From Parasitella parasitica NRRL 2501 (Eukaryota; Fungi; Mucoromycota), in contig MU619238.1 of assembly GCA_025201805.1 (NCBI GenBank), forward strand, positions 5,184 to 69,183: a stretch of DNA of 64,000 bases. Direction: 5' to 3'. The notes below the pieces were generated by a model. The model saw only the letters and a list, made by a program, of their open reading frames with translations. It was not told the origin of the DNA and did no database searches. The translations under genes and the position numbers were made by a program. This document shows, in pieces, positions 12,330 through 60,893 of the stretch; the stretch's first letter is position 1; each line of letters begins with the position of its first letter.

Positions 12330-12401
12330 GATTAATGTCTTTTTAATAAAAGTTATGTACAAAGTAAAGTGGAAATACACATGTATTTTTCTATGTACTA
12401 T

Positions 12402-26964: not shown

Positions 26965-27949
26965 GGACTTCAGCTGAAGGCTTTTGCGATATCCAATGTG
27001 TTCGTATACATGTTCATAAGGTTGAGGGGGCTACTTTATTGTGGTCTTGCAACACCCAATGTGTTCATNNNNNNNNNNNNNNNNNNNNNNNNNNNNNNNN
27101 NNNNNNNNNNNNNNNNNNNNNNNNNNNNNNNNNNNNNNNNNNNNNNNNNNNNNNNNNNNNNNNNNNNNNNNNNNNNNNNNNNNNNNNNNNNNNNNNNNNN
27201 NNNNNNNNNNNNNNNNNNNNNNNNNNNNNNNNNNNNNNNNNNNNNNNNNNNNNNNNNNNNNNNNNNNNNNNNNNNNNNNNNNNNNNNNNNNNNNNNNNNN
27301 NNNNNNNNNNNNNNNNNNNNNNNNNNNNNNNNNNNNNNNNNNNNNNNNNNNNNNNNNNNNNNNNNNNNNNNNNNNNNNNNNNNNNNNNNNNNNNNNNNNN
27401 NNNNNNNNNNNNNNNNNNNNNNNNNNNNNNNNNNNNNNNNNNNNNNNNNNNNNNNNNNNNNNNNNNNNNNNNNNNNNNNNNNNNNNNNNNNNNNNNNNNN
27501 NNNNNNNNNNNNNNNNNNNNNNNNNNNNNNNNNNNNNNNNNNNNNNNNNNNNNNNNNNNNNNNNNNNNNNNNNNNNNNNNNNNNNNNNNNNNNNNNNNNN
27601 NNNNNNNNNNNNNNNNNNNNNNNNNNNNNNNNNNNNNNNNNNNNNNNNNNNNNNNNNNNNNNNNNNNNNNNNNNNNNNNNNNNNNNNNNNNNNNNNNNNN
27701 NNNNNNNNNNNNNNNNNNNNNNNNNNNNNNNNNNNNNNNNNNNNNNNNNNNNNNNNNNNNNNNNNNNNNNNNNNNNNNNNNNNNNNNNNNNNNNNNNNNN
27801 NNNNNNNNNNNNNNNNNNNNNNNNNNNNNNNNNACCCAATGTGTTCATAAACGCGGGCATAAGGTGGAATTGAGCTTTCTTTTGCTGTGATGGTGCTGTC
27901 TTTGCCAATTATTCTGGACTTCAACTGACGGCTTTTGCGATATCCAATG
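26965..27949. repeat. Degenerate tandem repeat flanking an assembly gap (gap 27069-27833)
   Basis: ggacttca(g/a)ctga(a/c)ggcttttgcgatatccaatg occurs at ~26965 and ~27916. acccaatgtgttcat lies on both sides of the gap. Confidence 0.75.
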
Positions 27950-35918: not shown

Positions 35919-38900
35919 TTATCTTTTGTGAGGGTCTTCTAAATCAACAAATCCAAAGCATCTAACCCACTGATCATCAGGCACCAGTGATCCGAATAGC
36001 TCTTTCATCCTTTGTCCCAACTGTATAATAAAGATATATTTTTAGTGCTGAATGGCAGCAGGGTTGCAGTATATTTACCTTATCTAGTTCTATGATAATG
36101 CTTTCCATCATGATAACATAGGCATAATACACCATATAACACTCGTCTTTAACAGATTCGTTGCTATCTGTTAAGTCATTCTTTTTCAAATCTGCTGTTA
36201 GCTTTGGTAACTTCTGCAATTTCAACATGAGCATTTCTCTTGCTTTTTCTGCTGGAGGCAGATAAGGCGGTAAGGGTGTCTTTAATTGCAATGCAGATGC
36301 AAGCAAATAAAAGTAAAGCAAAACACTTCCTGCCATCTCCATCAGTTCCTGGCTGGCTGGCAGCATGAGATCCCGTCTTACTTGAGTGGCCCAGACGTCT
36401 TTCAATATAACAATACGGATCGACAGGAACTTGTCGAGAATGTTTTGGCAGGATGTGAGCATCGCTTCGTATGTTTTGGCGGGGAATGGACCCTTTAGGC
36501 GAGGTTCGTTGGGTGCGTAGGCTAACAAACCTTGAAGTTCTACTAGGCTAACTTGCAGCGAAAATTCCACATGCTGGAATTGGATAGACCTTGCTTCGTT
36601 GCGTTTTGCTATTGCCTCAAGCTCTTCTCGCGAGGTAACTGATCTACTATTGCTACTGCCATCAGTTGCTGCCCTGCCGTCTAAAATGACTTTTTTAACA
36701 AGGTGTGAATAATTTGTACTGGAATCATTTTTTGCTGCTGCTGCATGAACAATCGAGCGGGTGTTGTCTTCTGAATACTCTGCCACCAACTGCTTGTAGT
36801 ACCATGATAATCGAATGAGCAAATCCGAAAGCCCTTTTCGCATCTCTTTCCTTGCTTCAAACGGCCAGATATAGGCTGTAACTACCAAGCCTACGTGGTG
36901 CAGTTAATTGTTGTCAGTAATCCATATAGGTATATACAATATGTATTTACAAACTAACCGATAATGACACCAGCAGACACGGTTGCGCATCTCATGATAG
37001 CCAGCTCGATTACATCAATAACCTGCTCTTCATTTCTATGATTGTACATGAATGGTACAATTAAATTGTAAGAAAGTAAAGAAAACAAGCCAAATCTTCC
37101 ATGTTTATGATTCAAAATCATCCAAAAGCAAGGAATAGAAAATGCCCAAGACATTAATAGCAAGATGGGACCCTGATGTGGCAAAAACAGATAGAATAAT
37201 ACTGCAATGACTGAACCAAGGATAGTAGCTAATACTCGCAACACGGCAACCTGATTTGTCCCACCTACTGTAGGAGACATCACAGCCATGACCTATGTTG
37301 CCAATATGTGTTTAAATTAGTATTGCTACAATGCAAATCTACGAAAACGGTATATAATTACCGTAATAAGGGTCCAATCCATCTTCCAGGTTATAAAATA
37401 CTCTCGTGTTGCCGGGATGAATGCCATGGACGCAATTGCAAGAGCAATCAGTGTAGATTTAGACGCATATCGCACTGTATGCTGTCTAAACCATGAAAAA
37501 AAGCCCCAAAGGGTCAGAAAGAATCTTCGAAACTTTGTCTTTGGCTTGGGAGTATGCAGCGTATTGAACGTGTTGTTATTGTTTGGCACAAAAGAGTCAA
37601 TGGAGCTCTTTTTAATAATGACAGGTTTAGCTTTGTTGCTTTTACTTCCTCCATCTTTCGTATTTTGCTGTTTTTGATATTGAGCTTGAGTATCTGCGTG
37701 TCGTTGTCTCGAGTAGAAACAACAGCACAAGAACCAAACTTTGATACATAACACTATTAACACCCCATCAACGACACTTGTAAAAATATATTTGTACTTA
37801 CATGGGCTAACCAAATATCTTTTAATCATTTGCCAGAATCCTCCCTTCTTGTTTTGCTCCTCGTCATATTCGAATACGGACTGAACACATTCTACCAACA
37901 CCATCAACTCTTTGGCAAACTCCAGTAAGCAAAATACAAAAAAGTAGACCAAGAAAACATCTTCAGCAGGAAATTGGTTCATTAAATGCGAGTGCAATTC
38001 TTCAGGATTGATAGTGGCATTTTTCATCCGCATGCGCTTCATCTTTCGACGATACATGCGAGTCAATGCCAACTGTTGCGACTCTTCAAACAGAGCTATT
38101 GCCATTGCAAGATTTTGTCGCATTAGCCCGAAAGATGGTGTGGTCTCAGTTATTTGGCGGGTGAATCGACTTTGCAAGTGCACTATTGTTTGTTTGCAGG
38201 TGTATGCTAGTGACTTCATGGGAGGTCTTACCGTCTTGATAAATTGTACCAGCGCACCTTCTTCCTCTTCTTCTTCTCCTCTAGCGAGATGGTTATCATC
38301 GATTTCCTGCTCAATATGATAGTATCCATTCAGTGGCTGCCTTTCCGTTTGCTTCTTTAGCGATCTACCGCAGTTGTCGTCGTCTGCATCTGCGTCTAAG
38401 CTGTTTCTGTTACTGCCGCCAAACATTGACTGCGTGGACATGGTGTGCTCTTTCTTCAACTCGTATTCCATCTTCTTTCTTTGGTCTGTTGCCTTTACAT
38501 GATATACCTTCTTTTTTCGTCCGTAATGTGAACCTAGCTTGTCATGTTCTTGTGGTATAGAACCGTAGTTGGATGCATACTTTTTTCCTGGGCTTGCAGA
38601 TGTCTTCATGACTTCAAACTGCAATCCACAACTGCTGCGTAGACCGCCCACATGCTGGGCTAATCTTTGCAAACTAGATACAATGGTGTCATATCCTGCG
38701 GCATGCCTCCAGATATCTAGATTATAGTACTCTTTTTTAGCATCCGCTAGAGAAGATTGCAATGATGTGAAGCTTGTGCGATGGGCATTAATGGCGCTTT
38801 GTAAATTCTCGTTTGCGGTAAACTCTGGCAAGTCTGTGTCTAGTAGAAAGGTCTTGGTGAGCAATTTTAACAGGATTTTGATAGCCGTTAGCGTATCGTT

Positions 38901-40662
38901 GATGTCAGCCCTGTACACAGTTTGTTAATATACACACTAAAGTCCATAAAGATATGCTTACTTGAGCTTTTTAGTCGCTGTCATGGGCCATATAAACCAG
39001 CACACAAAAGCAGATATTGCTGTCCCTATAGTCACTATAGCAAACATCTCTTCAATGTACGTAGGATCAAAGTATGAAGGAATCACCGAGCCTTCTTTTA
39101 CCAAAACTGGAAATATGATCATGAATCCCAACCCACAGCCTACAAAAAGATTTGAGTTTAATCTTATATTCCTGGCATAAACCGCCCATAATTTACTTTA
39201 CCTGTTCCAATGGCTGGTTTATTGTAATGCGCCTTAATGAAGGATAATACAAATGTGCTACCAGCAAGCCAAAATCCAAGTGTTACACAGCAGGAAGTGA
39301 CATAATAATCCTGGGATCTCAAGTAAATGGCTACCAACATGCTTAACAACGAAATCAAAAGAGCACAGACTGTATAAAGTAGACCATAACCTGCGGCTTC
39401 TACCATACCGCCGACTGTTTTGGAAGGATTGAAGAAGACGGTTACCGTGGCAATGACATGGCTAGAAATATTTGCTGTTCCCAACATGCTGTTCAACATT
39501 GGGACAAACGTAAACAACGATCCCAATAAATAAGCAAAGCTACATTTCAGTACCATCTTTTGTCTATAGGACAAGGTAAAGAAATGACGCACAACCCATT
39601 CATACGCTGATTTCGCACCTCTCAAAAAGCAACTTCGGTTGGAATTCTTGAATTTCTTGTCTTTTCGTCTTCTCTTTACACGGCCGTCGAAATTATCCTC
39701 GTCTTCGCTTGTCTCGTTTGGTTGAAGGTCTTGAATAATCATGTTGGGATCTGAGGAGGAGGTTGGAAATAAGAGTGCTCTTCTTTCTCCCTCTTCTAAT
39801 ATATGATTATAAAATCTGTATGTGTAGAATACTTAGTTCGTTTGCGCAAGATTTTGATTAAAAAAAGCAGAACTTACTCGTTTGTTTGGCTTTTACTGGC
39901 TTGTCTTTGATGATGTGCATTCACTTCCGCTTCATCTTCCTTACCATCGAAGTAAAAATGATTGTAATGCCCCTTTATCTTTTTTTTCCCGTAATCCATA
40001 GATGCTGCCATTGGCATAGTAGATAGGGATACAGATCGTTTTTGCCTTGTTCCATCATCCAATACGACTTCATATTCCTCGCTTAAGTAATCATGGTAGT
40101 AAGATCCTGCAGGAGATCGAGATAACATACCGCTGTCCAAAGAGCCGTAATAGTAGAAATTGTTGGGTATGCTTCCACTGGTGCTTTGAACAACTGACAT
40201 GGGATGTATTATCAAATTGCTGCTGCTGCTTGCTGTGATGGGCGGCGCAGCGGCCTTGTATTGATTTATACTATCAAGCTCATTCGCTGCTGTGGGGCTG
40301 TCTACTGTTAGAGTGTTGCTGTTTTTGTCGATTGTAGCAATGGTTTCAATGAATGGCGTCGTATTTTCATTCTCAATTATAGTTTCTAGTCCCTGCCCTT
40401 GCTCTTCATCATCTGACTCACTAAGGCCAATTGCAGTATGAAATGTTTGCACAGAAAATGCACTCCTACTTGATGTAGAAGGCATTGGCCGTAAATTGTT
40501 CAAGTGAGAGTTTCTACTTGTTGATGGCGTAGGATTAGGTGTAAAGAAATCATCATCAGGAACAGACGAAGCCGATACATTTATTTCTGGAGTTGTAGTT
40601 ACATATCTTGCTAAGGTCTTGCCTAATAGCTTGCCATCTTTGCGATTATCTGCTAATGGCAT
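35919..40662 (-). CDS. ArAE/FUSC-family (fusaric acid resistance-like, aromatic acid exporter) membrane transporter
   Basis: VLKCSFAYLLGSLFTF, TVFFNPSKTVGGMVEA, LAQHVGGLRSS, VYFFVFCLLEFAKEL, MSPTVGG, IWPFEARKEMRKGLS, EPRLKGPFP, LPPYLPPAEKAR. Multi-exon with a long disordered N-terminus. Confidence 0.9.
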
Positions 40663-44685: not shown

Positions 44686-44762
44686 ATGTATAAACAATGC
44701 AATTGTCAAAACAATTGCAATAATTCTAGATGCCAGAAATGGCTTGTTTATTACACAATAAG
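44686..44762 (+). mobile_element. Possible remnant of a transposon C-terminal CXC-like Cys motif; cut by gap 44763-45067
   Basis: Translation KQCNCQNNCNNSRCQK resembles the CxCxxxCxxxRCxC tail of integrase-type DNA transposon proteins. Confidence 0.35.
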
Positions 44763-45199
44763 NNNNNNNNNNNNNNNNNNNNNNNNNNNNNNNNNNNNNN
44801 NNNNNNNNNNNNNNNNNNNNNNNNNNNNNNNNNNNNNNNNNNNNNNNNNNNNNNNNNNNNNNNNNNNNNNNNNNNNNNNNNNNNNNNNNNNNNNNNNNNN
44901 NNNNNNNNNNNNNNNNNNNNNNNNNNNNNNNNNNNNNNNNNNNNNNNNNNNNNNNNNNNNNNNNNNNNNNNNNNNNNNNNNNNNNNNNNNNNNNNNNNNN
45001 NNNNNNNNNNNNNNNNNNNNNNNNNNNNNNNNNNNNNNNNNNNNNNNNNNNNNNNNNNNNNNNNNNNNTTTTTTTTTATTTTTTTTATTTTCACATAAAA
45101 TTGATCCCAATTTTATTGCAATAACAATTAAATAAATTTAAATTAGAGAAAAATAATCTAACTGATAATATAGCCTGTAATTTTTTAATTTTAGCTGAA

Positions 45200-45786: not shown

Positions 45787-48700
45787 CTACAAATCCCACA
45801 CAATTTCATCAACATACATTGAAACGGTTTGTCTTGATCCGCCGAAAGCATCCAAGTCGTCCACATAAATTTTAAGCTGTCCCGGCATGCTTTCTTTGGG
45901 GTTAGAGATGGCAATTGAAAGAGTAGTGGTTCCTCCAGGCTCTACAGTACCAGAACGATCTTCATTTAATCCAGAAATCATCACAATTTCATTAGCCGGA
46001 AATTCAGCCGGGCCTTCCACCGATACCTTGAACCGTAAGGGTACCTTGTTGGCATGATTGATAATTGTAAGAGGCAGATTCTCTGGCATGCACGCAGAAT
46101 CCATGATATCAGAGCTTCTATTATCATTGTCCTGATAGTAGGTTACGAGCTTGAAATCTAGTCTTCGTTCACTAAGAGCAAAAGTAGCTGTTTCATCTAA
46201 AGCACATCTCACAGGGATTGTTTCTCTCATCCTAGCTGTTTGAACGCCTTCTACCTCATCGTCATCATCTTCTGCGGGACTTGTAGTTACCCAAATTTTG
46301 GCCATAATGACACCAGCAGGATCGGTGAGCTCAGGACGATTACAAGGCAAACGAGAAGTTTCATTAGGCGATGCTCTTACTCTAACTTCAATGCTGCCCT
46401 GAGGACCAATTGCAATATCACCTTTGAGAGGAGAATTAGTGTAGCGAGACAAGACATCCAAATTAACGTAGGAGCTCAATTCGGGCGTGATATCAGCACC
46501 AATTTCAAACCGTAAATCGTCATCTGTCTTGTTGTGTATCACAAACCAGTTATCACAGGGTGCGTTTTGAAGAGCAATAGGATGATGCAACGTGGGCAGC
46601 ACCAATTCGCCGTTACTTGATAAACGTTCAAACCGTAATTCAAACACTGTCATCAGCGCCTTCAAATGAAGGTGCATTACGTTGGCATGATTGCGCAAAT
46701 TTTCAATTTGAACATCAAAACGATGTAACCCAGAGGTTTGGTCAGGCATTTGTTTAGGCGTTAGCAAACCCTCGATGCGCTGATGCTTGCGCGATGGGAT
46801 ATAAAATGTCTTTTGTTTGATTGCGACCCCATTACGATCCAGGGGAGTAAAGCTCATAAACTCGGGTGTATTGATAATGTATGTAGCCGGTACATCCGAC
46901 AAGTTGCGGATTTCAGCTTCAAAGCGAGCAGGTTTGTAAGAAGTGCTGTGTCCAATTTTACCCAAATCAATACGATCCACAACAAGTTCCGTTCGAGACA
47001 CACAAAACAAAGCTTCCAATTCAAGAGCAAGAACCTCCAACTTCTGATGAGCGTCATACAATACCATCATGCCTTTCAGGGACCCGCTTTGGCCTTGGAG
47101 CGCTAAATATCTACCGTCTTCATCCAGTTTTTCAGCAGATGGGTTATGCAAACGCACACAAATTCGTTGACCAGGTTGCAACAAGACTTGACCGCTACGT
47201 TGTGCAAATAGGCTCTCCTTGTGTTCAACAGCAACATTTTTGATTTTGTTTTCATTGACAGCGAAACCAGCAGTGATGTCGATATCGCTCATGACTACAA
47301 GCTGCATTGGCTGTCCAGATGTATTTGCAATGTCGATCTCACGTACATAGAGACGGTTTGCATCAGCTTCTGGTAACTCTATCATCCGCAAAACTGTTTC
47401 ATCTTCACTCTGTTGAGCCACGGGACTGATGTACACACTTTCCCATTTGATAACAGGCAATGGATCAGCTTCATGATGATCAATTTGTTTACAAGAATTC
47501 GTATAGCCATTTAGAGGTTTATTGCCCAAAAGCCGCCTTTTAAAAGGCAAAGTCCAGGCATTCAACTTTTTACAATTCACAAAGAGTCGAACGCGAATCA
47601 CAAACACCTCCTGGCTGTTTCTTTTGTTGGTCACAATCAGCTTTTCATTCAAAAGTCCATAGCGATATGCGTTGATTCTAAACGTGATCTGGGCCAAAGA
47701 GGCTGCAGTCGAGCTGCAATCATTCAAAGAGCCACGGCAAACACTGTCAACACTGCCAGAGACATCATTTGGTTGAGGGCTCGCGAGGCTTTCCTTTCGC
47801 TTCTTTTCGTCCGCATCCAAATATCCGATATCCGAATCTCTGTGAATTTCAGGACTACGCCATCCACGCAAAGTGCCACTACGACGATCTAATTCAATAT
47901 TTGCGCTTGAGCATTCAATGTCGTAATCCAATGGAAGCTCTCCAGATTTGTTCTTGATGGTGAAGGCGCCGCAGATTTCTTGTTGCAGCAGATCAGTATA
48001 GCCCAAATTAATAACTTTGTCAGACACCTCAAGATGGGATTGTCCAATGATGGATATGAATTTGACGGTCTGAGTCAGCATCAACAGCATCTCTTGTTCT
48101 TTTGGCTCATGGTCAGAATCGTCCTTTTCGTAGACAGAGAATTTTATTCCGCCAACCAGTTTACGGCACTCGTCAGCCGAGTTGCCAAGATATCCCGTCA
48201 ATAGATTAGGCTGAACAGCCACCCAAACAGTTGCCATACCTTTATGCTTCAAAGGCATCATCTCCACAAGGCCATGCTCACCAGCCTCATCCATAAATAT
48301 CAACACTTGATGGGACAAGTTACTTTGACATGTAATAAAAACATCTTGGCTAGAGTTGTTCTCAATCAAAAGAGGAGTTACTTGAGAATACTTGCTTCCA
48401 GGATCAACATAGGAGAAGCCGAGATCCATTATGCCGTTTGCCTCATTGTCCAAAGAGGGGAAATTCAAATACGTGCTGCAATGAACTAAACACTGAATGG
48501 TAAAAGGCTGTATAGACCCAGTGTGCTTGTTTATGACAGAGAACTTGAATTGTTGTCTGCCCACTTGGGTGGGTTTTATGCCATAGCGAATTTTCTTTGT
48601 TTCTCCAGGCAGCAGACCCTTAACTTCCTCATCGGCATCAAAGTAAAATACTGATGGTTCTTGAGCAGTGGACAGCATGAGCTCCACAGGCTTGTCCGAT

Positions 48701-51700
48701 GTATTGGTAACCCTGACGTAGAATACAGTATCTTGATTCACCTCGACACGACCGCCATCGAAAAAGTCTCTTTCCAGTTTGATGGCTTCTTTCTCAACTA
48801 CAGGCTCTTTGATATTATCAGGAACAGCGCTGGTTTCACCATGATTAGTCGTAGTGCTCTCTTCAACAAGCAAAGCAGGATGAGCTAATTCAGTAGATTT
48901 ATCAGTAAGAGATTTTGTAGCAGTAGTCGAAACCATAGTCGCAGACAAGGCGGTGGTGGCACCAATGGCAGCAGTGGCAGCAGCAGCAGAAGTAGCGTTA
49001 GTGGAACTAGCCATTGACGCAGTATATGCTCTAGTTGATGCAGCGCCAGTATTTTCACCATCATTTTCAATAGCTAGTGCATCAATGTAGGCGGCTTCAT
49101 TCGTGTAGACTTCGGCAGCATAAACAACACTTTTGCATACATCAGTATTCTTATATTCGTGTACCAAAATACGGCCCTTGACAGAAATGGCGGCATGAAG
49201 CTCTCGATCATCCTTGGTATCTTGTGTTTGAAATGGCCTCGGTACAGGCTTGAAAGTGACAGACACGGTTTTGGAAGCATGTGCATCAAGATGAAATACA
49301 ATACTCTCTGCAGTCTTTTTGAATATCGCGTTGTTTTCCTTGATACTACTGGCAGATGTTGCTGGTTCGATATTGTTAACATTAGCATCCTTGGCATTGG
49401 TTTCGACAGTAGACGGACAATCTGAAGATGGAGGTTCTTTTGCTTCAACATCATATCCAGTTTTGGGAGATTCGATGGGAGCAATGTTCTCTTTGGAATC
49501 AGAACCCTCATTTTCGCTTTCCAAATTCTTCAATTTAGCAAGTTTACGCAGGTACTTTTTGACTTTATCAGGCTGAGCTTTACGTTTAGCAATCTTGAGC
49601 TTTTGCTCCAAATTCTCAATTTCTTCTTCAGCTTCTTTAGTCAAGGTATTGGTGTCATCTTCCTTGACGTCAAATTCAAATTCACCATAGTAGCGGCCAA
49701 ATATCACCTCATTTGGATCCACCCTTACTTCAAACATGCGAGATTGCTTGTTGGTGTTTGTCAACACAATAGTCTCGGTGCGCTGACAAAGCTGATCTAC
49801 CAAGCAGCGTCCAAAGGAAATCTCCAAAGACTTGATCAAGAAAGTAGACGGCTTGCGAACTTGAGCTTTCAGCAGCAACACTTGATCGTTGGTGCGATCA
49901 CGGATATTCTCGACCACCAGTTTCTCCATGAACGGACCAGACAAAGTCGGTTCAAACACAAAATCAACCTCTCGCTTACCGTAGGAACGGACGACACCGT
50001 AACGACCTACATCCAGATCAATGTCTCCTGAAGCGATCGACCCTGATTTCCGAATAGCGTAGAGCAGAGGCGTCTCACTACGATTGTGCAACACAATTGT
50101 CTTGGCATGGCGTTCATTTCGCTCGACAAGCCCAAAGTTGATGTTCTTCTGACCCAAGTCCATCACAGAACGACACAGCTGAGAACGCAGAATCACCTCA
50201 CGTACAGGGATATCGGTCTGTCTCAAGTCCAGCAAGTTTTCAAATTCGGTTTGTTCGATATCACGGTCAAATTGCACTAATCTCAAAAAGATGCGAGCGT
50301 CTTGTTTCTTGGGAGCAGATTGGATATGGGGTTTAGTAGAGCCGCAGGGAGTTATTACTACGACAACTTCCTCCTCGCCCTTGGGATCAACATCAACGAG
50401 CGAAGTGCGCACCAAAACACCCTTCTCTACCAGACGATCGAGCTCTCTGCGCCATGCCAGTTGATATCGGACAAATTGCTCTTCGGCAGATTGTTTAGGA
50501 AACAAGGGAGGTGCAGTCTTGGAGCCGTGTTCAAGCACAGAGATCAAGTCTTCGAACGGAACACGCGATTTACCTGCAATGTCAGACCAGTCCAGATTCT
50601 TTCTAGACTTATACCTTGCAGCTGTGATGCCCAAAGAACGCTTGGTCTTTGCGTTACGTGTGCCATAGTTGTTGTGGCGAGTATGGTCAGACAATCTCGT
50701 GGTATCAATGCGTTTCTTTGTCGTGGATGATGAAGCTGCACTGCTACTGTTGATCTTGGCAGATGTAGAAACACGAAGGTGATGACGACCCCCGGCTGCA
50801 AGTGTTGCATCTTTGCTGGCATCGCCGTTTGCTCCATGTTTGGTGTTGGCGATGTGTCTGCTGTTGGTAGCATTATTGTGCTTTTTGCCTGTAACTGGCC
50901 GCTGATGATGCTGAGGCTTGTTGGGTTGCACAGCATCATTCAAATCCGTGTCCTTGCCATCCACGCAACCACTCTCTTCGGGTATATGCAATAATCTGCT
51001 GTGGCCCTTGCGATGGTTCTTCAAGAAGCTGGGATCTGAACTGACTTGGATCATCTTTCTTCTATAGGATTTGAGAGAGTGCAAAGATGGCAGGGCTAAA
51101 TCAAGGTAAGCAGTCGACGAATGAGCCTGATCAATCTTCAATTGCTGTACTGAATTACGGAAGCGTCTAGCAGCCATCAAGTCCTTTTTCGCATCTGATG
51201 TACGTCTTTTGCTGGTTGCTTCAGATTCAGAAATTGGCGTTTTCGATGTGTCCTTGGATGCAGGGGGTTTTGGTTTAGCAATGCGGCGGTTGCTGATTGA
51301 TTCCAGCAGGAGCTTGGACCGTCTTCTGCTACTGACTGTCGATGCGAGCGCAGTAGCGGGTATATCAGCAACAACGTCTCCCTTCTCAATGGCTTCGGCA
51401 GTAATAGAGTTGGAAAGCTTTGACGATGATGAAAGGTTGGCCGAATTTGTTGTCGCGGCAGACGCTGCATTCAGGGCAGCAGATGAGGCGACGGCGCTCG
51501 CTGTGGCAGCAGGCGTTGCGTTTTCGTTAATCTTGTTCTTATTTCGAGTGTAGATGGCAATATCATCGGGTATCGATGTGGTGATTTCCAGCTGCAGTGG
51601 CTTGTTTCTGATATTTTCGACCGTAAATGTTCGCAATGAAGGCGAATTGAGAGCAATCGAACCAAAGTCGAGGAAATTTGCACCTGTTGCCGTCAAGATG

Positions 51701-53868
51701 CGGTAAAACAAGGAATGAAAAGTTACTCTGTTCTTGTCAATGTTGGTGCTGTGGACTTCGATGATCTGGTCGTTGTCCTTGTTAATAAAGTTGACGAGGG
51801 TAATCTGCTTGCGATAGTCAGGATTGACTTTGCGAGGATACAAGTCCAACTTGAGTTCTACATAGCTTCTTGGCTGAATGGTGATTTCACCTCGTAGACA
51901 ATTGAGCACTTTTGAACTGAACTGAAGCTCCACACGTGCCAATATGTCTGAGCGGTTGAAGATGTTGATAGGCAGAGACTTGAGGGTACCCACGTCTGTA
52001 TCACCAAAGTTGATCACTTTTGGAATAGCTTCTACAAAAGAGGTGCAGGTTCTTGCCCTACATTGAATCACTTTTTTTTCTTTTGGCTCTTCCGTGCGAA
52101 AGGTACCATATTCAAGCAGAATTCTAAAATTCCTTCGAATTAGCTGACCGGCATTAAAGTCTGTAATACAGGCGTCCTTTTGCGGTCGATAGGAGACTTG
52201 GATCACTCGCTCAGTACCTGGTTTCAGCACAAAATCTTCGATGCGTGTATAGCTTTCAGTTGTGCTTAAAGTCTCAGGGGCGTTTGAGAAAGGAGCAACA
52301 ACCGAGGCAGATGATACTGAACCCGCGGGAGAATTCTCTACAAAGGAACCAGAATCTGGAAACATGCTGCTGTCAACGCTCATCAGACCACTCAAACCAA
52401 GCTCAGAATCAGAATCCTCCGGGATTGTTGGCTGCGATGGATAATGGATGCGAGAACTGCCAGGCGATTCGGTCAACGCAGGCGAACAGGAGCCATCGTT
52501 GTCAGATGCGCGGACTGGAGTAGGCGAGGATGATCGAGAGCTCAATTCGCTGTTAGGGCCTGATAGCTCACTCATACCCGTAGCAGGTGTGTTTACTCCG
52601 CCTGTGTTGTTGCGACTCGTGCTATTATTGCTGTATTTCCGTCTCGTCGAGTTCATTCTAGTCGAGTCCACACGATCCAAAAATGCCTCATTTCGCTCCA
52701 CAACAGTTGTATCTTGCTTGATGTCAAAAATGACTTCGGCGCCATCAGGCAAAAACCGCACTTCTAATGGCGATTCGCTGACATTGTTCAGCACGATTTG
52801 TTGCACAGCCCAAGCACCAGAAATACAATCACCAAAATCTACCACATTGCCGCTGCTAACGATCAACGTCTCCTTTCTCAGCACAGATCGAACGGTAGCA
52901 TGTACTTTGGTCTGCACTACATTGCGAGCGTCGTTTTCGTTTTCGACTTGCAAGTCGTAGTTGTATTCGCCGACCTCCTTGGGCATAAAGAGCATACGAA
53001 CTTGCTTGCTGGAATAACTGAGGATAGGCTCGTCCAAAACCAACGCAGCACCCGTATCCGCATCGACGAACTGCAACCAATCTGAATTACTGATATCCAT
53101 GGTGTTCAGCAGCCAATACAGATCAATCTCGGATCTATTCTGTATCGTAAAATCCTTGTAGTACGTCTCGCCCAATACACAATCATCAAAGTTCAAGCCA
53201 GTTTCTGCAACATCCGTCCACAACGCAGACTGGCACACACTCGCTCTGAATTTAACAGACACTTGGTAGTCGGCTAAACTGGAGGTGTATAGCACATCTT
53301 TTACTGCTGCGCCATCGTCGACCTGATTTCTATCAGCCGAGTTGCTGTAATATCCAAAGAAAAAAAGACTTCCAGTAACGTTAAACATACTGAATGTCTC
53401 GGTGTCATCTGCAACTGAAATATCAAAGTCATCTTCGTTGTTCTCTCGAGCATCATCGGCAAGACGAGACGAAGTTTCTGGTAAGAACGCCAATATAAAG
53501 CTGCGAGTCTGGCCAGCAGCCAAACTGATTTGGTCAATATGGTTGATGTAATTGAACAACTGATTAAATGGGTATTTTCCAGCCTCACGAGACCAGCTCA
53601 CAGTGTTGGTTGTCATGATGTTTTCTAGACTTGCTTGCGGGAGGCTGGATATGTTTTCGTTTTCTAATTGAAAAGCAATTTGATTTCGCAAATTAGACCT
53701 CATCTTGACGAGGATAGTCTGATCTGACAAGTTGTGAATCTCGAGTTTTCTGAGTGCATGCAGTCCGTTCAGATATACATTGTCTAGTGTGATGCGGCCA
53801 TGGAGTCCAGATAACTCAAACATTGGTTTTGTCGTGGTATTAGCGAGTGTCGTCGGTTCATTATTCAT
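45787..53868 (-). CDS. Giant intronless 2693-aa protein with tandem ASH/PapD-like Ig-fold repeats (Hydin/CFAP47-like architecture), function unknown
   Basis: Uninterrupted 8082-bp ORF. Recurrent [LI][DN]FG-x(10-14)-hxhxN[RT]S modules are separated by Ser/Ala-rich low-complexity inserts and a short coiled coil. Confidence 0.85.
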   Translation of the reverse strand: MNNEPTTLANTTTKPMFELSGLHGRITLDNVYLNGLHALRKLEIHNLSDQTILVKMRSNLRNQIAFQLENENISSLPQASLENIMTTNTVSWSREAGKYPFNQLFNYINHIDQISLAAGQTRSFILAFLPETSSRLADDARENNEDDFDISVADDTETFSMFNVTGSLFFFGYYSNSADRNQVDDGAAVKDVLYTSSLADYQVSVKFRASVCQSALWTDVAETGLNFDDCVLGETYYKDFTIQNRSEIDLYWLLNTMDISNSDWLQFVDADTGAALVLDEPILSYSSKQVRMLFMPKEVGEYNYDLQVENENDARNVVQTKVHATVRSVLRKETLIVSSGNVVDFGDCISGAWAVQQIVLNNVSESPLEVRFLPDGAEVIFDIKQDTTVVERNEAFLDRVDSTRMNSTRRKYSNNSTSRNNTGGVNTPATGMSELSGPNSELSSRSSSPTPVRASDNDGSCSPALTESPGSSRIHYPSQPTIPEDSDSELGLSGLMSVDSSMFPDSGSFVENSPAGSVSSASVVAPFSNAPETLSTTESYTRIEDFVLKPGTERVIQVSYRPQKDACITDFNAGQLIRRNFRILLEYGTFRTEEPKEKKVIQCRARTCTSFVEAIPKVINFGDTDVGTLKSLPINIFNRSDILARVELQFSSKVLNCLRGEITIQPRSYVELKLDLYPRKVNPDYRKQITLVNFINKDNDQIIEVHSTNIDKNRVTFHSLFYRILTATGANFLDFGSIALNSPSLRTFTVENIRNKPLQLEITTSIPDDIAIYTRNKNKINENATPAATASAVASSAALNAASAATTNSANLSSSSKLSNSITAEAIEKGDVVADIPATALASTVSSRRRSKLLLESISNRRIAKPKPPASKDTSKTPISESEATSKRRTSDAKKDLMAARRFRNSVQQLKIDQAHSSTAYLDLALPSLHSLKSYRRKMIQVSSDPSFLKNHRKGHSRLLHIPEESGCVDGKDTDLNDAVQPNKPQHHQRPVTGKKHNNATNSRHIANTKHGANGDASKDATLAAGGRHHLRVSTSAKINSSSAASSSTTKKRIDTTRLSDHTRHNNYGTRNAKTKRSLGITAARYKSRKNLDWSDIAGKSRVPFEDLISVLEHGSKTAPPLFPKQSAEEQFVRYQLAWRRELDRLVEKGVLVRTSLVDVDPKGEEEVVVVITPCGSTKPHIQSAPKKQDARIFLRLVQFDRDIEQTEFENLLDLRQTDIPVREVILRSQLCRSVMDLGQKNINFGLVERNERHAKTIVLHNRSETPLLYAIRKSGSIASGDIDLDVGRYGVVRSYGKREVDFVFEPTLSGPFMEKLVVENIRDRTNDQVLLLKAQVRKPSTFLIKSLEISFGRCLVDQLCQRTETIVLTNTNKQSRMFEVRVDPNEVIFGRYYGEFEFDVKEDDTNTLTKEAEEEIENLEQKLKIAKRKAQPDKVKKYLRKLAKLKNLESENEGSDSKENIAPIESPKTGYDVEAKEPPSSDCPSTVETNAKDANVNNIEPATSASSIKENNAIFKKTAESIVFHLDAHASKTVSVTFKPVPRPFQTQDTKDDRELHAAISVKGRILVHEYKNTDVCKSVVYAAEVYTNEAAYIDALAIENDGENTGAASTRAYTASMASSTNATSAAAATAAIGATTALSATMVSTTATKSLTDKSTELAHPALLVEESTTTNHGETSAVPDNIKEPVVEKEAIKLERDFFDGGRVEVNQDTVFYVRVTNTSDKPVELMLSTAQEPSVFYFDADEEVKGLLPGETKKIRYGIKPTQVGRQQFKFSVINKHTGSIQPFTIQCLVHCSTYLNFPSLDNEANGIMDLGFSYVDPGSKYSQVTPLLIENNSSQDVFITCQSNLSHQVLIFMDEAGEHGLVEMMPLKHKGMATVWVAVQPNLLTGYLGNSADECRKLVGGIKFSVYEKDDSDHEPKEQEMLLMLTQTVKFISIIGQSHLEVSDKVINLGYTDLLQQEICGAFTIKNKSGELPLDYDIECSSANIELDRRSGTLRGWRSPEIHRDSDIGYLDADEKKRKESLASPQPNDVSGSVDSVCRGSLNDCSSTAASLAQITFRINAYRYGLLNEKLIVTNKRNSQEVFVIRVRLFVNCKKLNAWTLPFKRRLLGNKPLNGYTNSCKQIDHHEADPLPVIKWESVYISPVAQQSEDETVLRMIELPEADANRLYVREIDIANTSGQPMQLVVMSDIDITAGFAVNENKIKNVAVEHKESLFAQRSGQVLLQPGQRICVRLHNPSAEKLDEDGRYLALQGQSGSLKGMMVLYDAHQKLEVLALELEALFCVSRTELVVDRIDLGKIGHSTSYKPARFEAEIRNLSDVPATYIINTPEFMSFTPLDRNGVAIKQKTFYIPSRKHQRIEGLLTPKQMPDQTSGLHRFDVQIENLRNHANVMHLHLKALMTVFELRFERLSSNGELVLPTLHHPIALQNAPCDNWFVIHNKTDDDLRFEIGADITPELSSYVNLDVLSRYTNSPLKGDIAIGPQGSIEVRVRASPNETSRLPCNRPELTDPAGVIMAKIWVTTSPAEDDDDEVEGVQTARMRETIPVRCALDETATFALSERRLDFKLVTYYQDNDNRSSDIMDSACMPENLPLTIINHANKVPLRFKVSVEGPAEFPANEIVMISGLNEDRSGTVEPGGTTTLSIAISNPKESMPGQLKIYVDDLDAFGGSRQTVSMYVDEIVWDL

Positions 53869-53987
53869 AATAAAGAGTTTCTATGAATTCTCATTAATNN
53901 NNNNNNNNNNNNNNNNNNNNNNNAAAAAAAAAAAAAAAAAAAAAAAAAAGTATTTACAAAGTATGTGTTGTTGTCCAAACAAGTCTT

Positions 53988-54796: not shown

Positions 54797-56559
54797 TTAT
54801 TTATTCTTGGTATACAGTCGTGTACACCATGATTGAATGACACGAGAAATGTACAGAGAACGAGGGGACCAACTAATGTAGCTAACATGATGTCCGGCCT
54901 ATTTGTCAACCGTGTTTAGTCTTTTCAACATGCACAACGTATCATAGCACAGACTTACAGGCAACAGAATAAGCGTGCATGTGGAATTGGGAGCAGTGGC
55001 TGAAATGGACGTTAGGATATTCTAACTAGGGCACTGAATTTTCAGCTTACCTTCATCGCAAGCAATCTTCATCGCTTTGGACATTTTGCATTCAGTAAGG
55101 CTATCACGTTCCCCTGCAACCAGTAAAAATGGTACCAGGCTCTTTGTCTTGGGCACTAGAGCCAAGGGAGAATGCTGGTTCAAGAAGTCGACATCTACTT
55201 TATCCAAGTTGGCTACCTTTTTACAAAAGAAAAGAGCATGGTGAGGATCGCTGATTTGGTCCAAAGAACCACTCAAGCTAACAACACCACGAACTGAGGT
55301 ATCCACACTTTCAAATCCTGGCTGAAACTGAGGATTATTCGTCGTCATAGAAACCATGCAAGCCAAGTGAGCACCGGCAGAGTCGCCTACGTTAACCATA
55401 AGAATGTGTTTCTAGATCAAAAGCAAATGTATTTTCACCTGACAAGACGATGAAGTTGGGGTCACCGCCAAACGACGAAATGTTTTGCTTTAACCAACGA
55501 ATGGCACGTTTGATATCCATCAGATGAGTAGGATAAGCATTCTTTGGAGCCAAGCGATAGCCGACATTGACAGTAATCTATGCCGACAAGTTAGAATCTA
55601 CAAGCTTGTGCAAGTACCACGTAGGCTTCCTTACCCAATTGTTCTCTGAGATCATCAACTTCTGAAACGGATAAAAAGTATCCTTGGAACCCATTCTCCA
55701 TGCTCCACCATGAATATGTACCTTTGTTGCATGCACACATTTAGGATCCAACGGGTAATCTTCCATATAAACGTGTGTACTTACTAAAACTGGCCTTAAT
55801 CTAGCGTCAGTTGTTGAAGGTACTTCCTGAGAGAAAATATCCAGCATCATTTTCCGAGGCTGACTAAAATCTTGGTTTGATGTTTCCAATGCGTCTCTAA
55901 TCTCCTCGTTTGTTGCATAGGTAACTGATAGGCAATGAATTGTTTAAACATTTTTACTATTATCACACAAGCACCTTACTGTTGGGATGAACTTTAATAT
56001 TTGCTGGTGTCCAAATGGGATTGATCAATTTCTTCAAATCGTCAAAGCTAACTATGTATTTGAGTAAACTGGACAATATTACACATCATTTTTCTTGTAC
56101 CAAATAATGCTAGCCATAGGCTTGCTTGTGTTGTCCAGAGATCTGATCGTCTCATCAGCTACACTTTTGTCTTTGAGCATTTCGAGGAACAAAACCGCAA
56201 GACCACCGAAATTAACAAAGTCGATGGAATAAAAGAGCCAAGCCAAAGTGTAATCTAGAAGTATATAAACATGAATCCAATGCAATTTTTTTTAAAAAAA
56301 ACAATCAGGGAACCAACTTACTGAATCCACCCAAGAAGCCGACAATCTTGATCCATACCAAATTAATAAATATAATTTGAAGGGAGAATTCAGTTACCAT
56401 GGAAGAGGTAACTTCGATAATAAATAGATACTTGCGCAATGAATGAGCGAATAGCTGCCTAATCACAGGCTTATCAAATGCGCAGAGGATGAAAAACGAG
56501 GTAAATAGCACAGAGAATATGTAGCTAGTAGCAGCAAATGCTGAAAATAGCGAAAGCAT
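54797..56559 (-). CDS. Membrane-anchored alpha/beta hydrolase (HSL-like esterase, isoprenylcysteine methylesterase/BD-FAE type)
   Basis: VHIHGGAWRMG, VNVGYRLAPKNAYPTHLMDIKRAIRW, GDSAGAHLA nucleophile elbow, AGERDSL, AGHH. N-terminal TM helices. Multi-exon. Confidence 0.9.
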
Positions 56560-59665: not shown

Positions 59666-60893
59666 ATGAAAGAGTCGATCAATGAAGAAGAATCTGAGAA
59701 AACTACCCAAACTGTTCTCCCAGACATCAAAAAAATGACTAAAGTTATTCATAGTATGCCAAATGTTCGCTGGGCTCCTTTGACAGGCATTCCGTTCGAA
59801 AGAAGAGTCCAAACAGCCGTTGTTCTGTTGTGGGTTTTCCTTTTGGGCAATTGCATTACTCTGTTCTGTTGTTCCCTGTTTCTACCTGTCCTATGGCCTC
59901 TTCATATAGCTTACATCATCTATCTTTACCGTGATCAGTCGGCTGAGAATGGCGGGCGTCGCTCAGATTGGTTTCGACGCTTGCCAGTGTGGAACTATTT
60001 TGCTGGCTATTTCCCAGTTAAACTGGTGAAAGAATCAGATTTGAACCCTTGCAAGAATTATGTCTTTGGCTACCATCCGCATGGAATAATTAGCATGGGG
60101 GCGTTTTGCAATTTCGCAACAGAGGCTACCAAGTTTTCAGAGTTATTTCCTGGCATTAATGCGTCTTTACTGACCCTCACAACCAACTTTAAATTCCCTA
60201 TTTACCGTGATATCATATTGGCTCTTGGCATCGCATCTGTTTCGCGCCATTCATGCGAGCATATCCTATCTTCAGGCCCAGGCCGTTCCATTGTCATTGT
60301 CATCGGTGGAGCTTCAGAGTCTCTGAGCGCTCGTCCGGGAATAGCTGATTTGGTGCTCAAAAAGAGATTAGGTTTTATTCGAATGGCAATTCGACATGGA
60401 GCCGATCTAGTGCCTACTTTCTCGTTTGGAGAAAATGATTTGTATGAGCAAGTTGACAACTCAAGCGGCAGTTGGCTCTGGAATGTTCAAAAGAGAATGC
60501 AGCGAGCTGTGGGATTCACTATGCCCTTGTTTCATGCTCGTGGCATTTTCAATTGTAAGCTACCTTCTTTCTGGAAAAAAAACAAGCAGATCAACTCATA
60601 TTTTTGTTAGACAATGTCGGATTGATTCCTTACAGACATCAAGTGGTTACTGTTGGTAAGGGAGCTTAACGCATGTAAAATGAAAGATAACGGTTACACT
60701 AACTGCCAAATAAAAACTTATAGTTGGAAACCCAATTTCTGTGCCTAAATTGAAGGCAGGTCAGACAGAGCCTACTCAAGAGCAGCTTCTGGAAACTCAG
60801 GCATTGTATATCGAGGAATTGGAGGCTATCTATGAAAAATATAAGGATGTCTATGCAAAAGACAGAAAACAAGATATGCGCATTATTAGTTAA
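59666..60893 (+). CDS. DGA1: Diacylglycerol O-acyltransferase type 2 (DGAT2)
   Basis: WAPLTGIPFERRVQT, GYFPVKL, FGYHPHGIIS, GGASESL, RLGFIRMAIRHGADLVPTFSFGEND, VGKPI. Two introns. Stop 60891-60893. Confidence 0.96.

What the first reader, a model, noticed from the sequence alone, without database searches (positions are those of the whole stretch)
45787..53868. Intronless 2693-aa protein with about 14 ASH/PapD-like Ig domains: a Hydin-type scaffold in a fungus presumed to lack flagella
Seen: one 8-kb ORF with no intron, although most neighbouring genes have several. It carries about 14 similar modules, e.g. GLNFDDCVLGETYYKDFTIQNRSE, VVDFGDCISGAWAVQQIVLNNVSE, VINFGDTDVGTLKSLPINIFNRSD, FLDFGSIALNSPSLRTFTVENIRN, NINFGLVERNERHAKTIVLHNRSE, EISFGRCLVDQLCQRTETIVLTNTNK, VINLGYTDLLQQEICGAFTIKNKSG, RIDLGKIGHSTSYKPARFEAEIRNLSD. 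No signal peptide or TM segment is evident. There is a coiled coil (EEEIENLEQKLKIAKRK) and long disordered inserts. Established: this LDFG..IxN pattern marks ASH (ASPM-SPD2-Hydin)/PapD-like domains. Their long tandem arrays occur in ciliary central-pair proteins (Hydin, CFAP47, CFAP65, DLEC1), in CEP192 and in TRAPPII subunits; Mucorales have no cilia or centrioles. Inference: an uncharacterised cytoplasmic scaffold, either a repurposed ciliary/centrosomal relic (spindle pole body or microtubule role) or a membrane-trafficking factor. This is the best candidate here for an undescribed system.
Basis: partly seen in the sequence, partly recalled or inferred. Interest (0 to 1): 0.8.

Follow-up and report, generated by a model that had tools for sequence, protein, structure and literature searches.

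The report
Ancient cilium-independent ASH-repeat scaffold protein
A real 300-kDa Mucor protein made of about 14 Hydin-like beta-sandwich modules belongs to an unstudied family found from amoebae and algae to fungi, with or without flagella, so it is an ancient scaffold of unknown job and not a ciliary leftover.

Summary
Window 45787-53868 (-) is one uninterrupted 2693-aa ORF with no signal peptide or TM segment. It has about 14 beta-sandwich modules: nine are recognisable as ASH/PapD-like repeats by sequence, and 11 are modelled by AlphaFold2. Four long disordered inserts sit inside or between modules. A 45-residue conserved helix lies inside one module.

The protein is not an orthologue of Hydin, CEP192/Spd-2, CFAP47/65/74, TRAPP subunits or TMEM131. 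It belongs to an uncharacterised family with full-length collinearity in Dictyostelium, Capsaspora, ichthyosporeans, choanoflagellates, oomycetes, Naegleria, Anaeramoeba, a malawimonad, Picozoa, Paulinella, Mesostigma, a liverwort, and chytrid to mucoromycote fungi. It is shortened in Basidiomycota. No Ascomycota or animal appeared among named hits. Presence does not track flagella, so "ciliary relic" is not supported.

Family hallmarks are QKNINFG...KSGSIASGD and E-LEQKLKIA-RKG. Mucorales lost the ancestral C-terminal ~600 residues and carry a second, short paralogue on another contig.

Function is untested. I favour a cytosolic elongated scaffold, possibly microtubule- or MTOC-associated (about 0.3), with a trafficking role as rival. 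RNA evidence could not be obtained. The scan had not noted this family on other DNA.

The parts
45787..53868 (-). Whole coding sequence, 2693 aa plus TAG stop, no intron
   Evidence: collinear with the Rhizopus orthologue end to end
53233..53820 (-). N1 (aa 17-212): beta-sandwich with a helical insert; no sequence similarity to the other modules
   Evidence: AF2; hhalign
52888..53223 (-). N2 (aa 216-327): ASH-type module
   Evidence: Pfam Cep192_D4/CFAP74-4th/HYDIN Ig; AF2; hhalign 96% to M1 and C5
52045..52866 (-). N3 (aa 335-608): ASH-type module split by disordered insert IDR1
   Evidence: AF2: strands at 335-384 and 540-608, pLDDT under 50 at 392-537; hhalign 75%
52258..52695 (-). IDR1 (aa 392-537): Ser/Thr/Pro-rich acidic disordered insert
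51739..52035 (-). N4 (aa 612-710): ASH module
   Evidence: Pfam ASH 33.9 bits; AF2; hhalign 91-95%
51529..51687 (-). N5a (aa 728-780): first strands of an ASH module
   Evidence: Pfam Cep192_D4 37.9 bits, profile positions 8-50 only; hhalign 95% to the first 40 positions of C1
50554..51528 (-). IDR2 (aa 781-1105): basic (pI 10.6, net +29) Ser/Thr-rich disordered linker
   Evidence: basic in most fungal orthologues, not in all eukaryotes
50173..50553 (-). N5b (aa 1106-1232): conserved block, inferred to complete N5; not modelled
   Evidence: conservation; inference only; weak hhalign support
49864..50166 (-). M1 (aa 1235-1335): most conserved ASH module, carrying the family hallmark QKNINFG...KSGSIASGD (aa 1274-1282 = window 50023-50049)
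   Evidence: Pfam; pan-eukaryote alignment; hhalign
49069..49857 (-). M2 (aa 1338-1600): ASH-like module interrupted by the conserved helix and a disordered stretch; not modelled
   Evidence: inferred
49519..49656 (-). Conserved charged helix (aa 1405-1450), motif E-LEQKLKIA-RKG--DK
   Evidence: invariant columns in 25 fungi; kept in Dictyostelium, oomycetes, Naegleria, choanoflagellates and Riccia
48799..49068 (-). IDR4 (aa 1601-1690): Ala/Ser/Thr-rich disordered linker
48481..48783 (-). C1 (aa 1696-1796): ASH module, the one that matches Hydin best
   Evidence: Pfam HYDIN Ig/ASH; PDB profile hit on Hydin E 4e-10; AF2
48043..48429 (-). C2 (aa 1814-1942): beta-sandwich, divergent in sequence
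   Evidence: AF2; hhalign
47551..48033 (-). C3 (aa 1946-2106): ASH module with a 42-residue disordered loop (aa 2010-2051)
   Evidence: AF2; hhalign 96% to C1
46999..47454 (-). C4 (aa 2139-2290): beta-sandwich, divergent
   Evidence: AF2
46648..46992 (-). C5 (aa 2293-2407): ASH module
   Evidence: AF2; hhalign 97% to C1 and N2
46192..46638 (-). C6 (aa 2411-2559): beta-sandwich
   Evidence: AF2; hhalign 67% to N4
45793..46182 (-). C7 (aa 2563-2692): last beta-sandwich; the protein ends here, where non-Mucorales orthologues continue for 600-900 residues
   Evidence: AF2

Best explanation
**Shown**
- The gene encodes a cytosolic, about 300-kDa member of an uncharacterised family that appears to date from the last eukaryotic common ancestor.
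- The ancestral plan has four collinear blocks:
  - an N block of five sandwiches;
  - a middle block of two ASH modules plus a conserved charged helix;
  - a C block of seven sandwiches;
  - an extension of three to four more sandwiches ending in a helical domain.
- Mucorales lost the extension.

**Inferred**
- The protein works as a long, semi-rigid string of beta-sandwich modules joined by flexible, probably phospho-regulated linkers.
- It would lie along or bridge a large cellular surface and recruit partners there.
- The indispensable part is the N block plus the middle block, which every lineage and every shortened copy keeps. Its hallmark patch KSGSIASGD and the LEQKLKIA-RKG helix are the likely binding sites.
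- The surface is most likely microtubule-based or at the microtubule-organising centre and nuclear envelope. I give this about 0.3. The reasoning is analogy with Hydin/FAP47/FAP65/FAP74 and Spd-2/CEP192; it is not tested.
- The role does not depend on cilia.
For: - **Reality and architecture.**
- **Family breadth.** 183 word-search relatives across early-diverging fungi. The exhaustive profile search gave 1305 hits at E<=1e-3 and 346 at E<=1e-30, and the 150 best were all under 1e-91.
- **Named members**:
  - Fungi: Batrachochytrium, Blastocladiella.
  - Amoebozoa and Holozoa: Dictyostelium, Capsaspora, Creolimax, Sphaeroforma, Salpingoeca, Mylnosiga.
  - SAR and Picozoa: Aphanomyces, Albugo, Phytophthora, Paulinella, Picozoa.
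  - Green lineage: Mesostigma, Riccia.
  - Other supergroups: Naegleria, Anaeramoeba, Gefionella, Diphylleia.
- **Collinearity.** All four blocks are found in order in these taxa.
- **Hallmark motifs.** They are conserved in all of these taxa.
- **Core.** The N and middle blocks are retained in Basidiomycota and in the Mucor short paralogue.
- **Closest solved relatives.** By profile these are Hydin (E 4e-10 and 1.5e-8), FAP74, FAP65 and FAP47. By fold they are the central-pair chains of 7som, 7sqc and 9ijj (E down to 7e-38).
- **Cytosolic.** No TM segment or signal peptide.
- **Rest of the genome.** The only other hits of the HYDIN-type Ig model are the short paralogue and an OCRL-type 5-phosphatase.
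Against: - There is no experimental or expression evidence.
- The microtubule/MTOC link rests only on analogy with other ASH-array proteins.
- Generic Ig arrays (NUP210, alpha-2-macroglobulins, mastigoneme) also appear in the fold search at weaker scores.
- The basic charge of linker IDR2 is common in fungi but not universal.
- The middle region (aa 1100-1690) was not modelled.
- Absence from animals and Ascomycota is only 'not seen among named hits'.
Confidence: 0.6

Rival explanations
1. It is a divergent orthologue of Spd-2/CEP192. It would serve as the pericentriolar-type scaffold of the acentriolar spindle pole body, with the M1-M2 pair plus helix as the equivalent of the Spd-2 domain.
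For: - Cep192_D4 is the top Pfam family.
- D4 is the first ASH domain of the Spd-2 domain (PMC11922060).
- The second module of the M1-M2 pair carries a large insert with a conserved helix, as in the Spd-2 domain.
- Dictyostelium keeps Cep192 in an acentriolar centrosome (PMC8467581).
- No animal member of this family was seen, and animals have CEP192.
Against: - There is no hit to Cep192_D5 (PF22074), the second half of the Spd-2 domain, in any scan.
- The D4 hits fall on four separate modules (N2, N5, M1, C1) and are not collinear with D1-D8.
- The defining motifs LxGYGG and GDExxR are absent from the window protein. In the 21 relatives checked LxGYGG never occurs and GDExxR occurs only once each in Piromyces and Blastocladiella, far C-terminal of the M1-M2 pair.
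- Profiles A1 and A3 hit no CEP192/Spd-2 chain in a PDB copy dated after that paper, at E up to 1 and 10; I did not confirm that those entries are in the copy.
- A chytrid orthology study found no CEP192 in chytrids, which have this family (10.1101/2025.01.03.631223).
- The Dictyostelium centrosome review lists no Cep192 in Albugo, which has a clear member of this family.
- The insert in M2 lies mid-domain, not after strand f.
Confidence: 0.13
2. It is a membrane-trafficking factor. Its ASH modules would bind Rab GTPases or vesicle coats, as in OCRL/INPP5B and the TRAPPII/III subunits.
For: - ASH domains occur in TRAPPC8/9/10/11/13 and in OCRL (established knowledge).
- There are weak sub-threshold Pfam hits to TRAPPC13_C (E 5e-5) and to OCRL-like ASH in one orthologue.
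Against: - No TRAPP-specific N-terminal domains, no phosphatase and no lipid-binding domain were found.
- The TRAPPC13_C hit is below its cut-off and overlaps the generic HYDIN Ig hit.
- The closest sequence and fold matches are axonemal ASH arrays, not trafficking proteins.
Confidence: 0.17
3. It is a decaying relic of a ciliary central-pair protein (Hydin, CFAP47, CFAP65 or CFAP74) left over from a flagellated ancestor.
For: Domain-level similarity to Hydin, FAP65, FAP74 and FAP47.
Against: - There is full-length collinear orthology with proteins of the same architecture in flagellate and aflagellate organisms alike.
- Conservation is strong, at 30-35% identity over about 1600 residues between Mucor and chytrids.
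- No Hydin_ADK domain or CH domain was found.
- The ORF is intact over 8 kb.
Confidence: 0.03
4. It is not a functional gene, only a chance ORF or a pseudogene.
For: No RNA evidence was obtained.
Against: - The ORF is 8 kb and open.
- Hundreds of orthologues exist.
- The AlphaFold2 models are confident.
Confidence: 0.01

Closest known systems
Hydin (central-pair C2b projection protein; PDB 7n6g, 7sqc, 9ijj)
   Same: - It is a long cytosolic tandem array of ASH/PapD-like Ig modules with no TM segment.
- It is the best sequence-profile match among solved structures (E 4e-10 and 1.5e-8).
- It is among the best fold matches.
   Different: - Hydin is about 5000 aa with many more modules and a Hydin_ADK domain, and it is confined to organisms with motile 9+2 cilia (established knowledge).
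- The window protein has no such domain.
- The similarity is at single-module level only.
- This family has its own four-block plan and hallmark motifs, and it occurs in aflagellates.
Spd-2/CEP192
   Same: - It combines long disordered regions with a run of ASH modules.
- Cep192_D4 is the top Pfam hit.
- It is a scaffold that also works at the acentriolar Dictyostelium centrosome (PMC8467581).
   Different: - The window protein has no Spd-2 domain: no D5 hit and no LxGYGG or GDExxR motif.
- The domains are not collinear with CEP192.
- No PDB profile hit to CEP192/Spd-2 structures was found.
FAP47/CFAP47, FAP65/CFAP65, FAP74/CFAP74 (central apparatus)
   Same: ASH-array fold. There are weak profile hits (E 0.003-0.2), Pfam CFAP74-4th and CFAP65-4th Ig hits, and top Foldseek chains from 7som, 7sqc and 9ijj.
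   Different: The window protein has no CH domain or other family-specific parts. These proteins are ciliary only; this family is not.
ASH domains of OCRL/INPP5B and of TRAPPC8/9/10/11/13
   Same: Same domain superfamily. The genome's own OCRL-type gene is the only other hit of the HYDIN Ig model apart from the paralogue.
   Different: Those proteins carry one or two ASH domains attached to catalytic or TPR parts. Here there are about 14 sandwiches and nothing else.
TMEM131/TMEM131L
   Same: PapD-like Ig arrays. There are sub-threshold Pfam hits.
   Different: TMEM131 has a signal peptide and a TM segment with luminal arrays. The window protein has neither.

Membership tests
ASH/PapD-like Ig superfamily (domain level) | Pfam hits over the curated cut-offs | tested here: met
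   PF22073 73.7 bits (cut-off 35.5), PF22544 52.8 (25.5), PF15780 45.3 (27), PF24798 43.6 (28), PF24507 38.3 (27), PF14874 32.9 (27)
ASH/PapD-like Ig superfamily (domain level) | Seven- to eight-stranded beta-sandwich fold | tested here: met
   AF2 models are all-beta, pLDDT 86.8 and 72.7. The best Foldseek matches are ASH arrays of the central apparatus.
Spd-2/CEP192 | Spd-2 domain: adjacent ASH4 (PF22073) and ASH5 (PF22074) pair | tested here: not met
   No PF22074 hit in the window protein or in three holozoan relatives. PF22073 hits are scattered over four modules.
Spd-2/CEP192 | Conserved motifs LxGYGG (motif 1) and GDExxR (motif 2) (PMC11922060) | tested here: not met
   Neither motif, nor relaxed forms of them, occurs in the window protein. 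In the 21 relatives LxGYGG never occurs; GDExxR occurs once each in Piromyces (aa 3706) and Blastocladiella (aa 3438), far C-terminal of the M1-M2 pair.
Spd-2/CEP192 | [quoted passage not shown] | not tested
Profile searches of the PDB found no CEP192/Spd-2 chain.
Hydin | Hydin_ADK domain, about 5000 aa, orthology to central-pair Hydin | tested here: not met
   No such Pfam hit. Similarity to Hydin is limited to single modules of 75-100 residues.
TRAPP subunits with ASH domains (TRAPPC8/9/10/11/13) | Family-specific N-terminal TRAPP/TPR domains | tested here: not met
   None found in the Pfam scan. TRAPPC13_C scores 23.7 bits, below its 27.9 cut-off, and overlaps the HYDIN Ig hit.
TMEM131 | Signal peptide and transmembrane segment | tested here: not met
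   Polar N-terminus. The best 19-residue hydropathy mean is 1.48.
The unnamed pan-eukaryotic family described here | Collinear N, middle and C blocks | tested here: met
   Profiles A3, A1 and A2 match in order in the window protein and in 20 or more distant taxa.
The unnamed pan-eukaryotic family described here | Hallmarks QKNINFG...KSGSIASGD and E-LEQKLKIA-RKG | tested here: met
   Present at aa 1242-1282 and 1414-1430.
The unnamed pan-eukaryotic family described here | C-terminal extension (three to four sandwiches plus helical end) | tested here: not met
   Absent from the ORF, from the window and, with a protein query and a profile, from the whole assembly. It is absent in all Mucorales orthologues, which end at the same point.

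The most novel reading that the evidence does not exclude
The family is the missing cilium-independent ancestor-type ASH scaffold of eukaryotic microtubule-organising centres. It would be a structural component of acentriolar centrosomes, spindle pole bodies or the perinuclear microtubule apparatus in fungi, amoebae, oomycetes and unicellular relatives of animals. Its M1-M2-helix core would be the ancient counterpart of the Spd-2 domain. Animals would have replaced it with CEP192, and ascomycete yeasts would have lost it, which is why model-organism cell biology never met it.
Probability: 0.15. Interest if true: 0.85.

Novelty: new variant of a known kind. Interest (0 to 1): 0.6.

Why it matters
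ASH-domain arrays are regarded as a signature of cilia, centrosomes and Golgi traffic. Here a 300-400 kDa ASH-array protein with a fixed four-block plan appears to date from the last eukaryotic common ancestor and is kept under constraint in many organisms that never build a flagellum. It was not seen in animals or ascomycete yeasts, which would explain why nobody has studied it.

It is directly testable in tractable species that carry it: Mucor lusitanicus, Cryptococcus neoformans, Ustilago maydis, Dictyostelium, Capsaspora and Phytophthora. The natural truncation series says where to look first. That series runs from the full form, to Mucorales without the extension, to Basidiomycota and the Mucor short paralogue with only the N and middle blocks. 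It points to the M1 patch KSGSIASGD and the LEQKLKIA-RKG helix.

If the protein proves to be part of the spindle pole body or the cytoplasmic microtubule apparatus, it would bear on how acentriolar organising centres evolved.

Tried and rejected
2. **Animal orthologues.** A word search with the choanoflagellate member returned only three proteins, because low-complexity words filled the candidate list. It says nothing about animals.
3. **ESM Atlas.** The feature search and the shape search gave only generic ASH clusters.
4. **Kinesin fusion.** Two Malassezia gene models join a kinesin motor to this protein. In the DNA they are two tandem ORFs, and other Malassezia models start at the second one. 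I treat this as a merged gene model, not a Rosetta-stone link.
5. **Missing C-terminal extension.** It was not found downstream in the window or elsewhere in the assembly with a protein or a profile. The same tool found the gene itself and a paralogue with profile A1, so the search works. The 306-N gap at 44763-45068 cannot hide it, because all Mucorales orthologues from other assemblies stop at the same residue.
6. **Neighbour genes.** The look-up of encoding contigs had no record for the window protein, the M. circinelloides orthologue or the second dictyostelid.
7. **Size of Dictyostelium Cep192.** It could not be found in the papers read.
8. **Locus tags.** Tags of six family members occur in no searchable paper.
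Full report
**The observation.** Window 45787-53868 on the minus strand is one ORF of 2693 codons from ATG to TAG. It is richer in G+C (0.43-0.49) than its flanks. The calculated mass is 300 kDa and the pI is 5.8. The N-terminus is polar, and the most hydrophobic 19-residue stretch averages only 1.48 on the Kyte-Doolittle scale, so there is no signal peptide or membrane segment. The Rhizopus orthologue aligns from residue 1 to 2693 in a single piece, so no intron needs to be assumed. Neighbouring genes (a DAGAT acyltransferase around 59666-60610 and a BD-FAE/FSH1-type hydrolase around 55025-55399) appear only as ORF pieces covering part of their Pfam profiles, as expected for multi-exon genes.

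**Domain make-up.**
- Pfam gives six ASH-type families over their curated cut-offs, led by Cep192_D4 (E 1.7e-20), HYDIN/CFA65/VesB Ig (4.9e-14) and ASH (1e-11). Scanned in pieces, the hits fall on aa 222-315, 617-690, 730-775, 1240-1325 and 1696-1791.
- AlphaFold2 with a 109-row alignment folds aa 1690-2693 as seven consecutive beta-sandwiches (mean pLDDT 86.8).
- AlphaFold2 with an 89-row alignment folds aa 1-790 as four sandwiches and the start of a fifth (pLDDT 72.7). The stretch 392-537 is disordered and lies inside the third sandwich.
- Profile-profile comparison of the individual modules links N2, N4, M1, C1, C3 and C5 at 84-97% probability over their whole lengths. N3, the first half of N5, the first half of M2, and C6 link more weakly. 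N1, C2, C4 and C7 are sandwiches by model only.
- Two points are inferred because aa 1100-1690 was not modelled. The first is that N5 is completed after the 325-residue linker. The second is that M2 is one module interrupted by the helix.
- The linkers are Ser/Thr-rich. The longest (aa 781-1105) is strongly basic (pI 10.6), as in most fungal orthologues but not in all eukaryotes.

**Relatives.**
- A word-indexed search found 183 relatives. These cover Mucorales (96% identity to Mucor plumbeus, so the window is from a Mucor), Umbelopsis, Endogonales, Mortierellomycotina, Glomeromycotina, Basidiobolus, chytrids and Neocallimastigomycota. All are annotated as hypothetical.
- An exhaustive HMMER search with a 25-row profile of aa 1100-2100 found 1305 proteins at E<=1e-3 and 346 at E<=1e-30. 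The 150 best were all below 1e-91.
- Names recovered for 30 of them show the breadth of the family:
  - Fungi: Batrachochytrium, Blastocladiella, Sorochytrium, Dinochytrium and the basidiomycete Ceraceosorus.
  - Amoebozoa: Dictyostelium purpureum.
  - Holozoa: Capsaspora, Creolimax, Sphaeroforma, and the choanoflagellates Salpingoeca and Mylnosiga.
  - Stramenopiles: Aphanomyces, Albugo, Phytophthora.
  - Other supergroups: Paulinella, Picozoa, Mesostigma, the liverwort Riccia, Diphylleia, Naegleria, Anaeramoeba and the malawimonad Gefionella.
- A search seeded with the Ceraceosorus protein added Ustilago, Sporisorium, Malassezia, Tilletia, Mixia, Cryptococcus, Kwoniella and others. It added no Ascomycota and no Agaricomycetes.
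- No animal appeared among the named proteins. This is not proof of absence.

**Architecture across eukaryotes.** Non-Mucorales orthologues are 600-900 residues longer at the C-terminus. This extension is itself well conserved: three to four more sandwiches and a helical end with the motif YYIVDQLVYY...GENFFQLA. Profiles were built for the N block, the middle block, the C block and the extension. They match in that order in Dictyostelium, oomycetes, Naegleria, Anaeramoeba, Gefionella, Riccia, Picozoa, choanoflagellates, ichthyosporeans and all non-Dikarya fungi outside Mucorales. The family is therefore one orthologous lineage with a fixed plan that appears to date from the last eukaryotic common ancestor.
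- Mucorales lack the extension. It is not in the ORF, not in the window and not found in the 32.8-Mb assembly. Orthologues from other Mucorales assemblies end at the same residue.
- Basidiomycota keep only the N and middle blocks.

Two motifs are kept in every supergroup sampled: QKNINFG...KSGSIASGD in module M1, and the charged helix E-LEQKLKIA-RKG--DK inserted in M2. They mark the part of the protein that no lineage has given up.

**A second copy in the same genome.** Profile A1 also matches contig C94 of the assembly at E 1.2e-130. This copy has the N block (41-60% identity) and the middle block (46%). It stops just after M2, at the residue that corresponds to aa 1593 of the window protein. 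It lies in two ORFs in different frames that meet in the disordered linker, so there is an intron or a frameshift. A maximum-likelihood tree of the middle block places this short copy, with three unnamed short proteins, as sister to the long Mucorales proteins and inside the branch that follows Umbelopsis (SH-aLRT 99). The basidiomycete short forms group elsewhere. So the duplication is specific to Mucorales, and the truncations in Mucorales and Basidiomycota are independent.

**Comparison with known families.**
- *Hydin and other central-pair proteins.* Among solved structures, profiles of the N and middle/C parts hit only Chlamydomonas Hydin (E 1.5e-8 and 4e-10), FAP74, FAP65 and FAP47, each over single modules. 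Foldseek ranks chains of the Chlamydomonas and mouse central apparatus first for both models (E down to 7e-38 and 4e-28), ahead of generic Ig arrays. "Hydin-type" is therefore a fair description of the modules. But there is no Hydin_ADK or CH domain, and the family plan is its own.
- *CEP192.* This needed a closer look because Cep192_D4 is the top Pfam hit and D4 is the first half of the Spd-2 domain that defines the family (PMC11922060). Several tests speak against membership:
  - The second half (D5, PF22074) is never hit.
  - The D4 hits lie on four different modules.
  - The defining motifs LxGYGG and GDExxR are absent from the window protein; among 21 relatives GDExxR occurs only once each in Piromyces and Blastocladiella, far C-terminal of M1-M2.
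  - No CEP192/Spd-2 chain is hit in the PDB.
  - A chytrid orthology study reports no CEP192 in chytrids (10.1101/2025.01.03.631223).
  - The Dictyostelium centrosome review lists no Cep192 in Albugo. Both chytrids and Albugo have this family.
  
  I could not obtain the Dictyostelium cepH or human CEP192 sequences, so a remote relationship is not excluded. I give it 0.13.
- *TRAPP subunits and TMEM131.* They fail on their defining parts.
- *Rest of the genome.* The HYDIN-type Ig model finds only this gene, its short paralogue and an OCRL-type inositol 5-phosphatase. That fits a fungus without axonemal ASH proteins, although such counts are lower bounds.

**How it most likely works.**
- *Shown:* it is a soluble string of about 14 sandwiches with flexible inserts and a conserved core.
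- *Inferred:* it serves as an elongated platform that lies along or bridges a large structure and recruits partners. The M1 patch and the helix would be the key contact sites, and the Ser/Thr-rich linkers would be regulatory.
- *Which structure:* this is open. Hydin, FAP47, FAP65, FAP74 and CEP192 all work on microtubule-based structures. By analogy I favour microtubules or the organising centre at about 0.3. A Rab or membrane-traffic role, as for OCRL and TRAPP ASH domains, gets about 0.17.
- *What the distribution excludes:* the phyletic pattern rules out a role that needs cilia.

**Limits.** There is no model of aa 1100-1690. Absence in animals, Ascomycota, Agaricomycetes and seed plants is only unobserved. 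The paper searches cover open-access text only. The scan's own notes held nothing on this family apart from the present finding.

**Verdict.** This is a distinct, unstudied, pan-eukaryotic variant of the ASH-array proteins, not a ciliary relic.

Noticed in passing
G000:C94:106989-110928 (+) (loci L003, L004, L005): A short paralogue of the window gene, with the N and middle blocks only. It lies in two ORFs of about 409 and 968 codons in different frames that meet in the disordered linker, and it ends just after module M2. It keeps KKSGSIASG and EQKLKIALRK. A tree makes it a Mucorales-specific duplicate.
   Followed up: partly
Orthologues P0051, P0053, P0059, P0081, P0103 and others; absent after window 45787: All non-Mucorales members carry a conserved 600-900-residue C-terminal extension: three to four more sandwiches plus a helical end with YYIVDQLVYY...GENFFQLA. 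It has no Pfam or PDB match. Mucorales have lost it.
   Followed up: yes
P0185, P0295, P0330, P0364, P0351 (Basidiomycota): Ustilaginomycotina, Malassezia, Tremellomycetes and Mixia keep only the N and middle blocks (1350-2300 aa). No Ascomycota or Agaricomycetes appeared among 129 hits.
   Followed up: partly
L001:5932-14113 (Malassezia brasiliensis): A gene model fuses a kinesin motor to the ASH protein. In the DNA these are two tandem same-strand ORFs (5932-9249 and 9470-14113), so it is probably a merged model. The same adjacency is annotated in M. vespertilionis.
   Followed up: partly
window 53899-53923, 44763-45068 and 27069-27833: Runs of N (25, 306 and 765 bases). The first lies 31 bases upstream of the start codon, next to a long T tract. 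The second explains the cluster of overlapping stop-free 'ORFs' at 44686-45135 and the low G+C reading there.
   Followed up: yes
G000:C102:58354-59812 (-) (locus L006:4354-5812): An OCRL/INPP5B-type inositol 5-phosphatase with its ASH domain and a RhoGAP remnant. It is the only other hit of the HYDIN-type Ig model in the assembly.
   Followed up: yes
window 59666-60610 (+) and 55025-55399 (-): The neighbours are a DAGAT-family acyltransferase (E 4e-85) and a BD-FAE/FSH1-type serine hydrolase exon. Other flanking ORFs (37326-40662) have no Pfam match.
   Followed up: no
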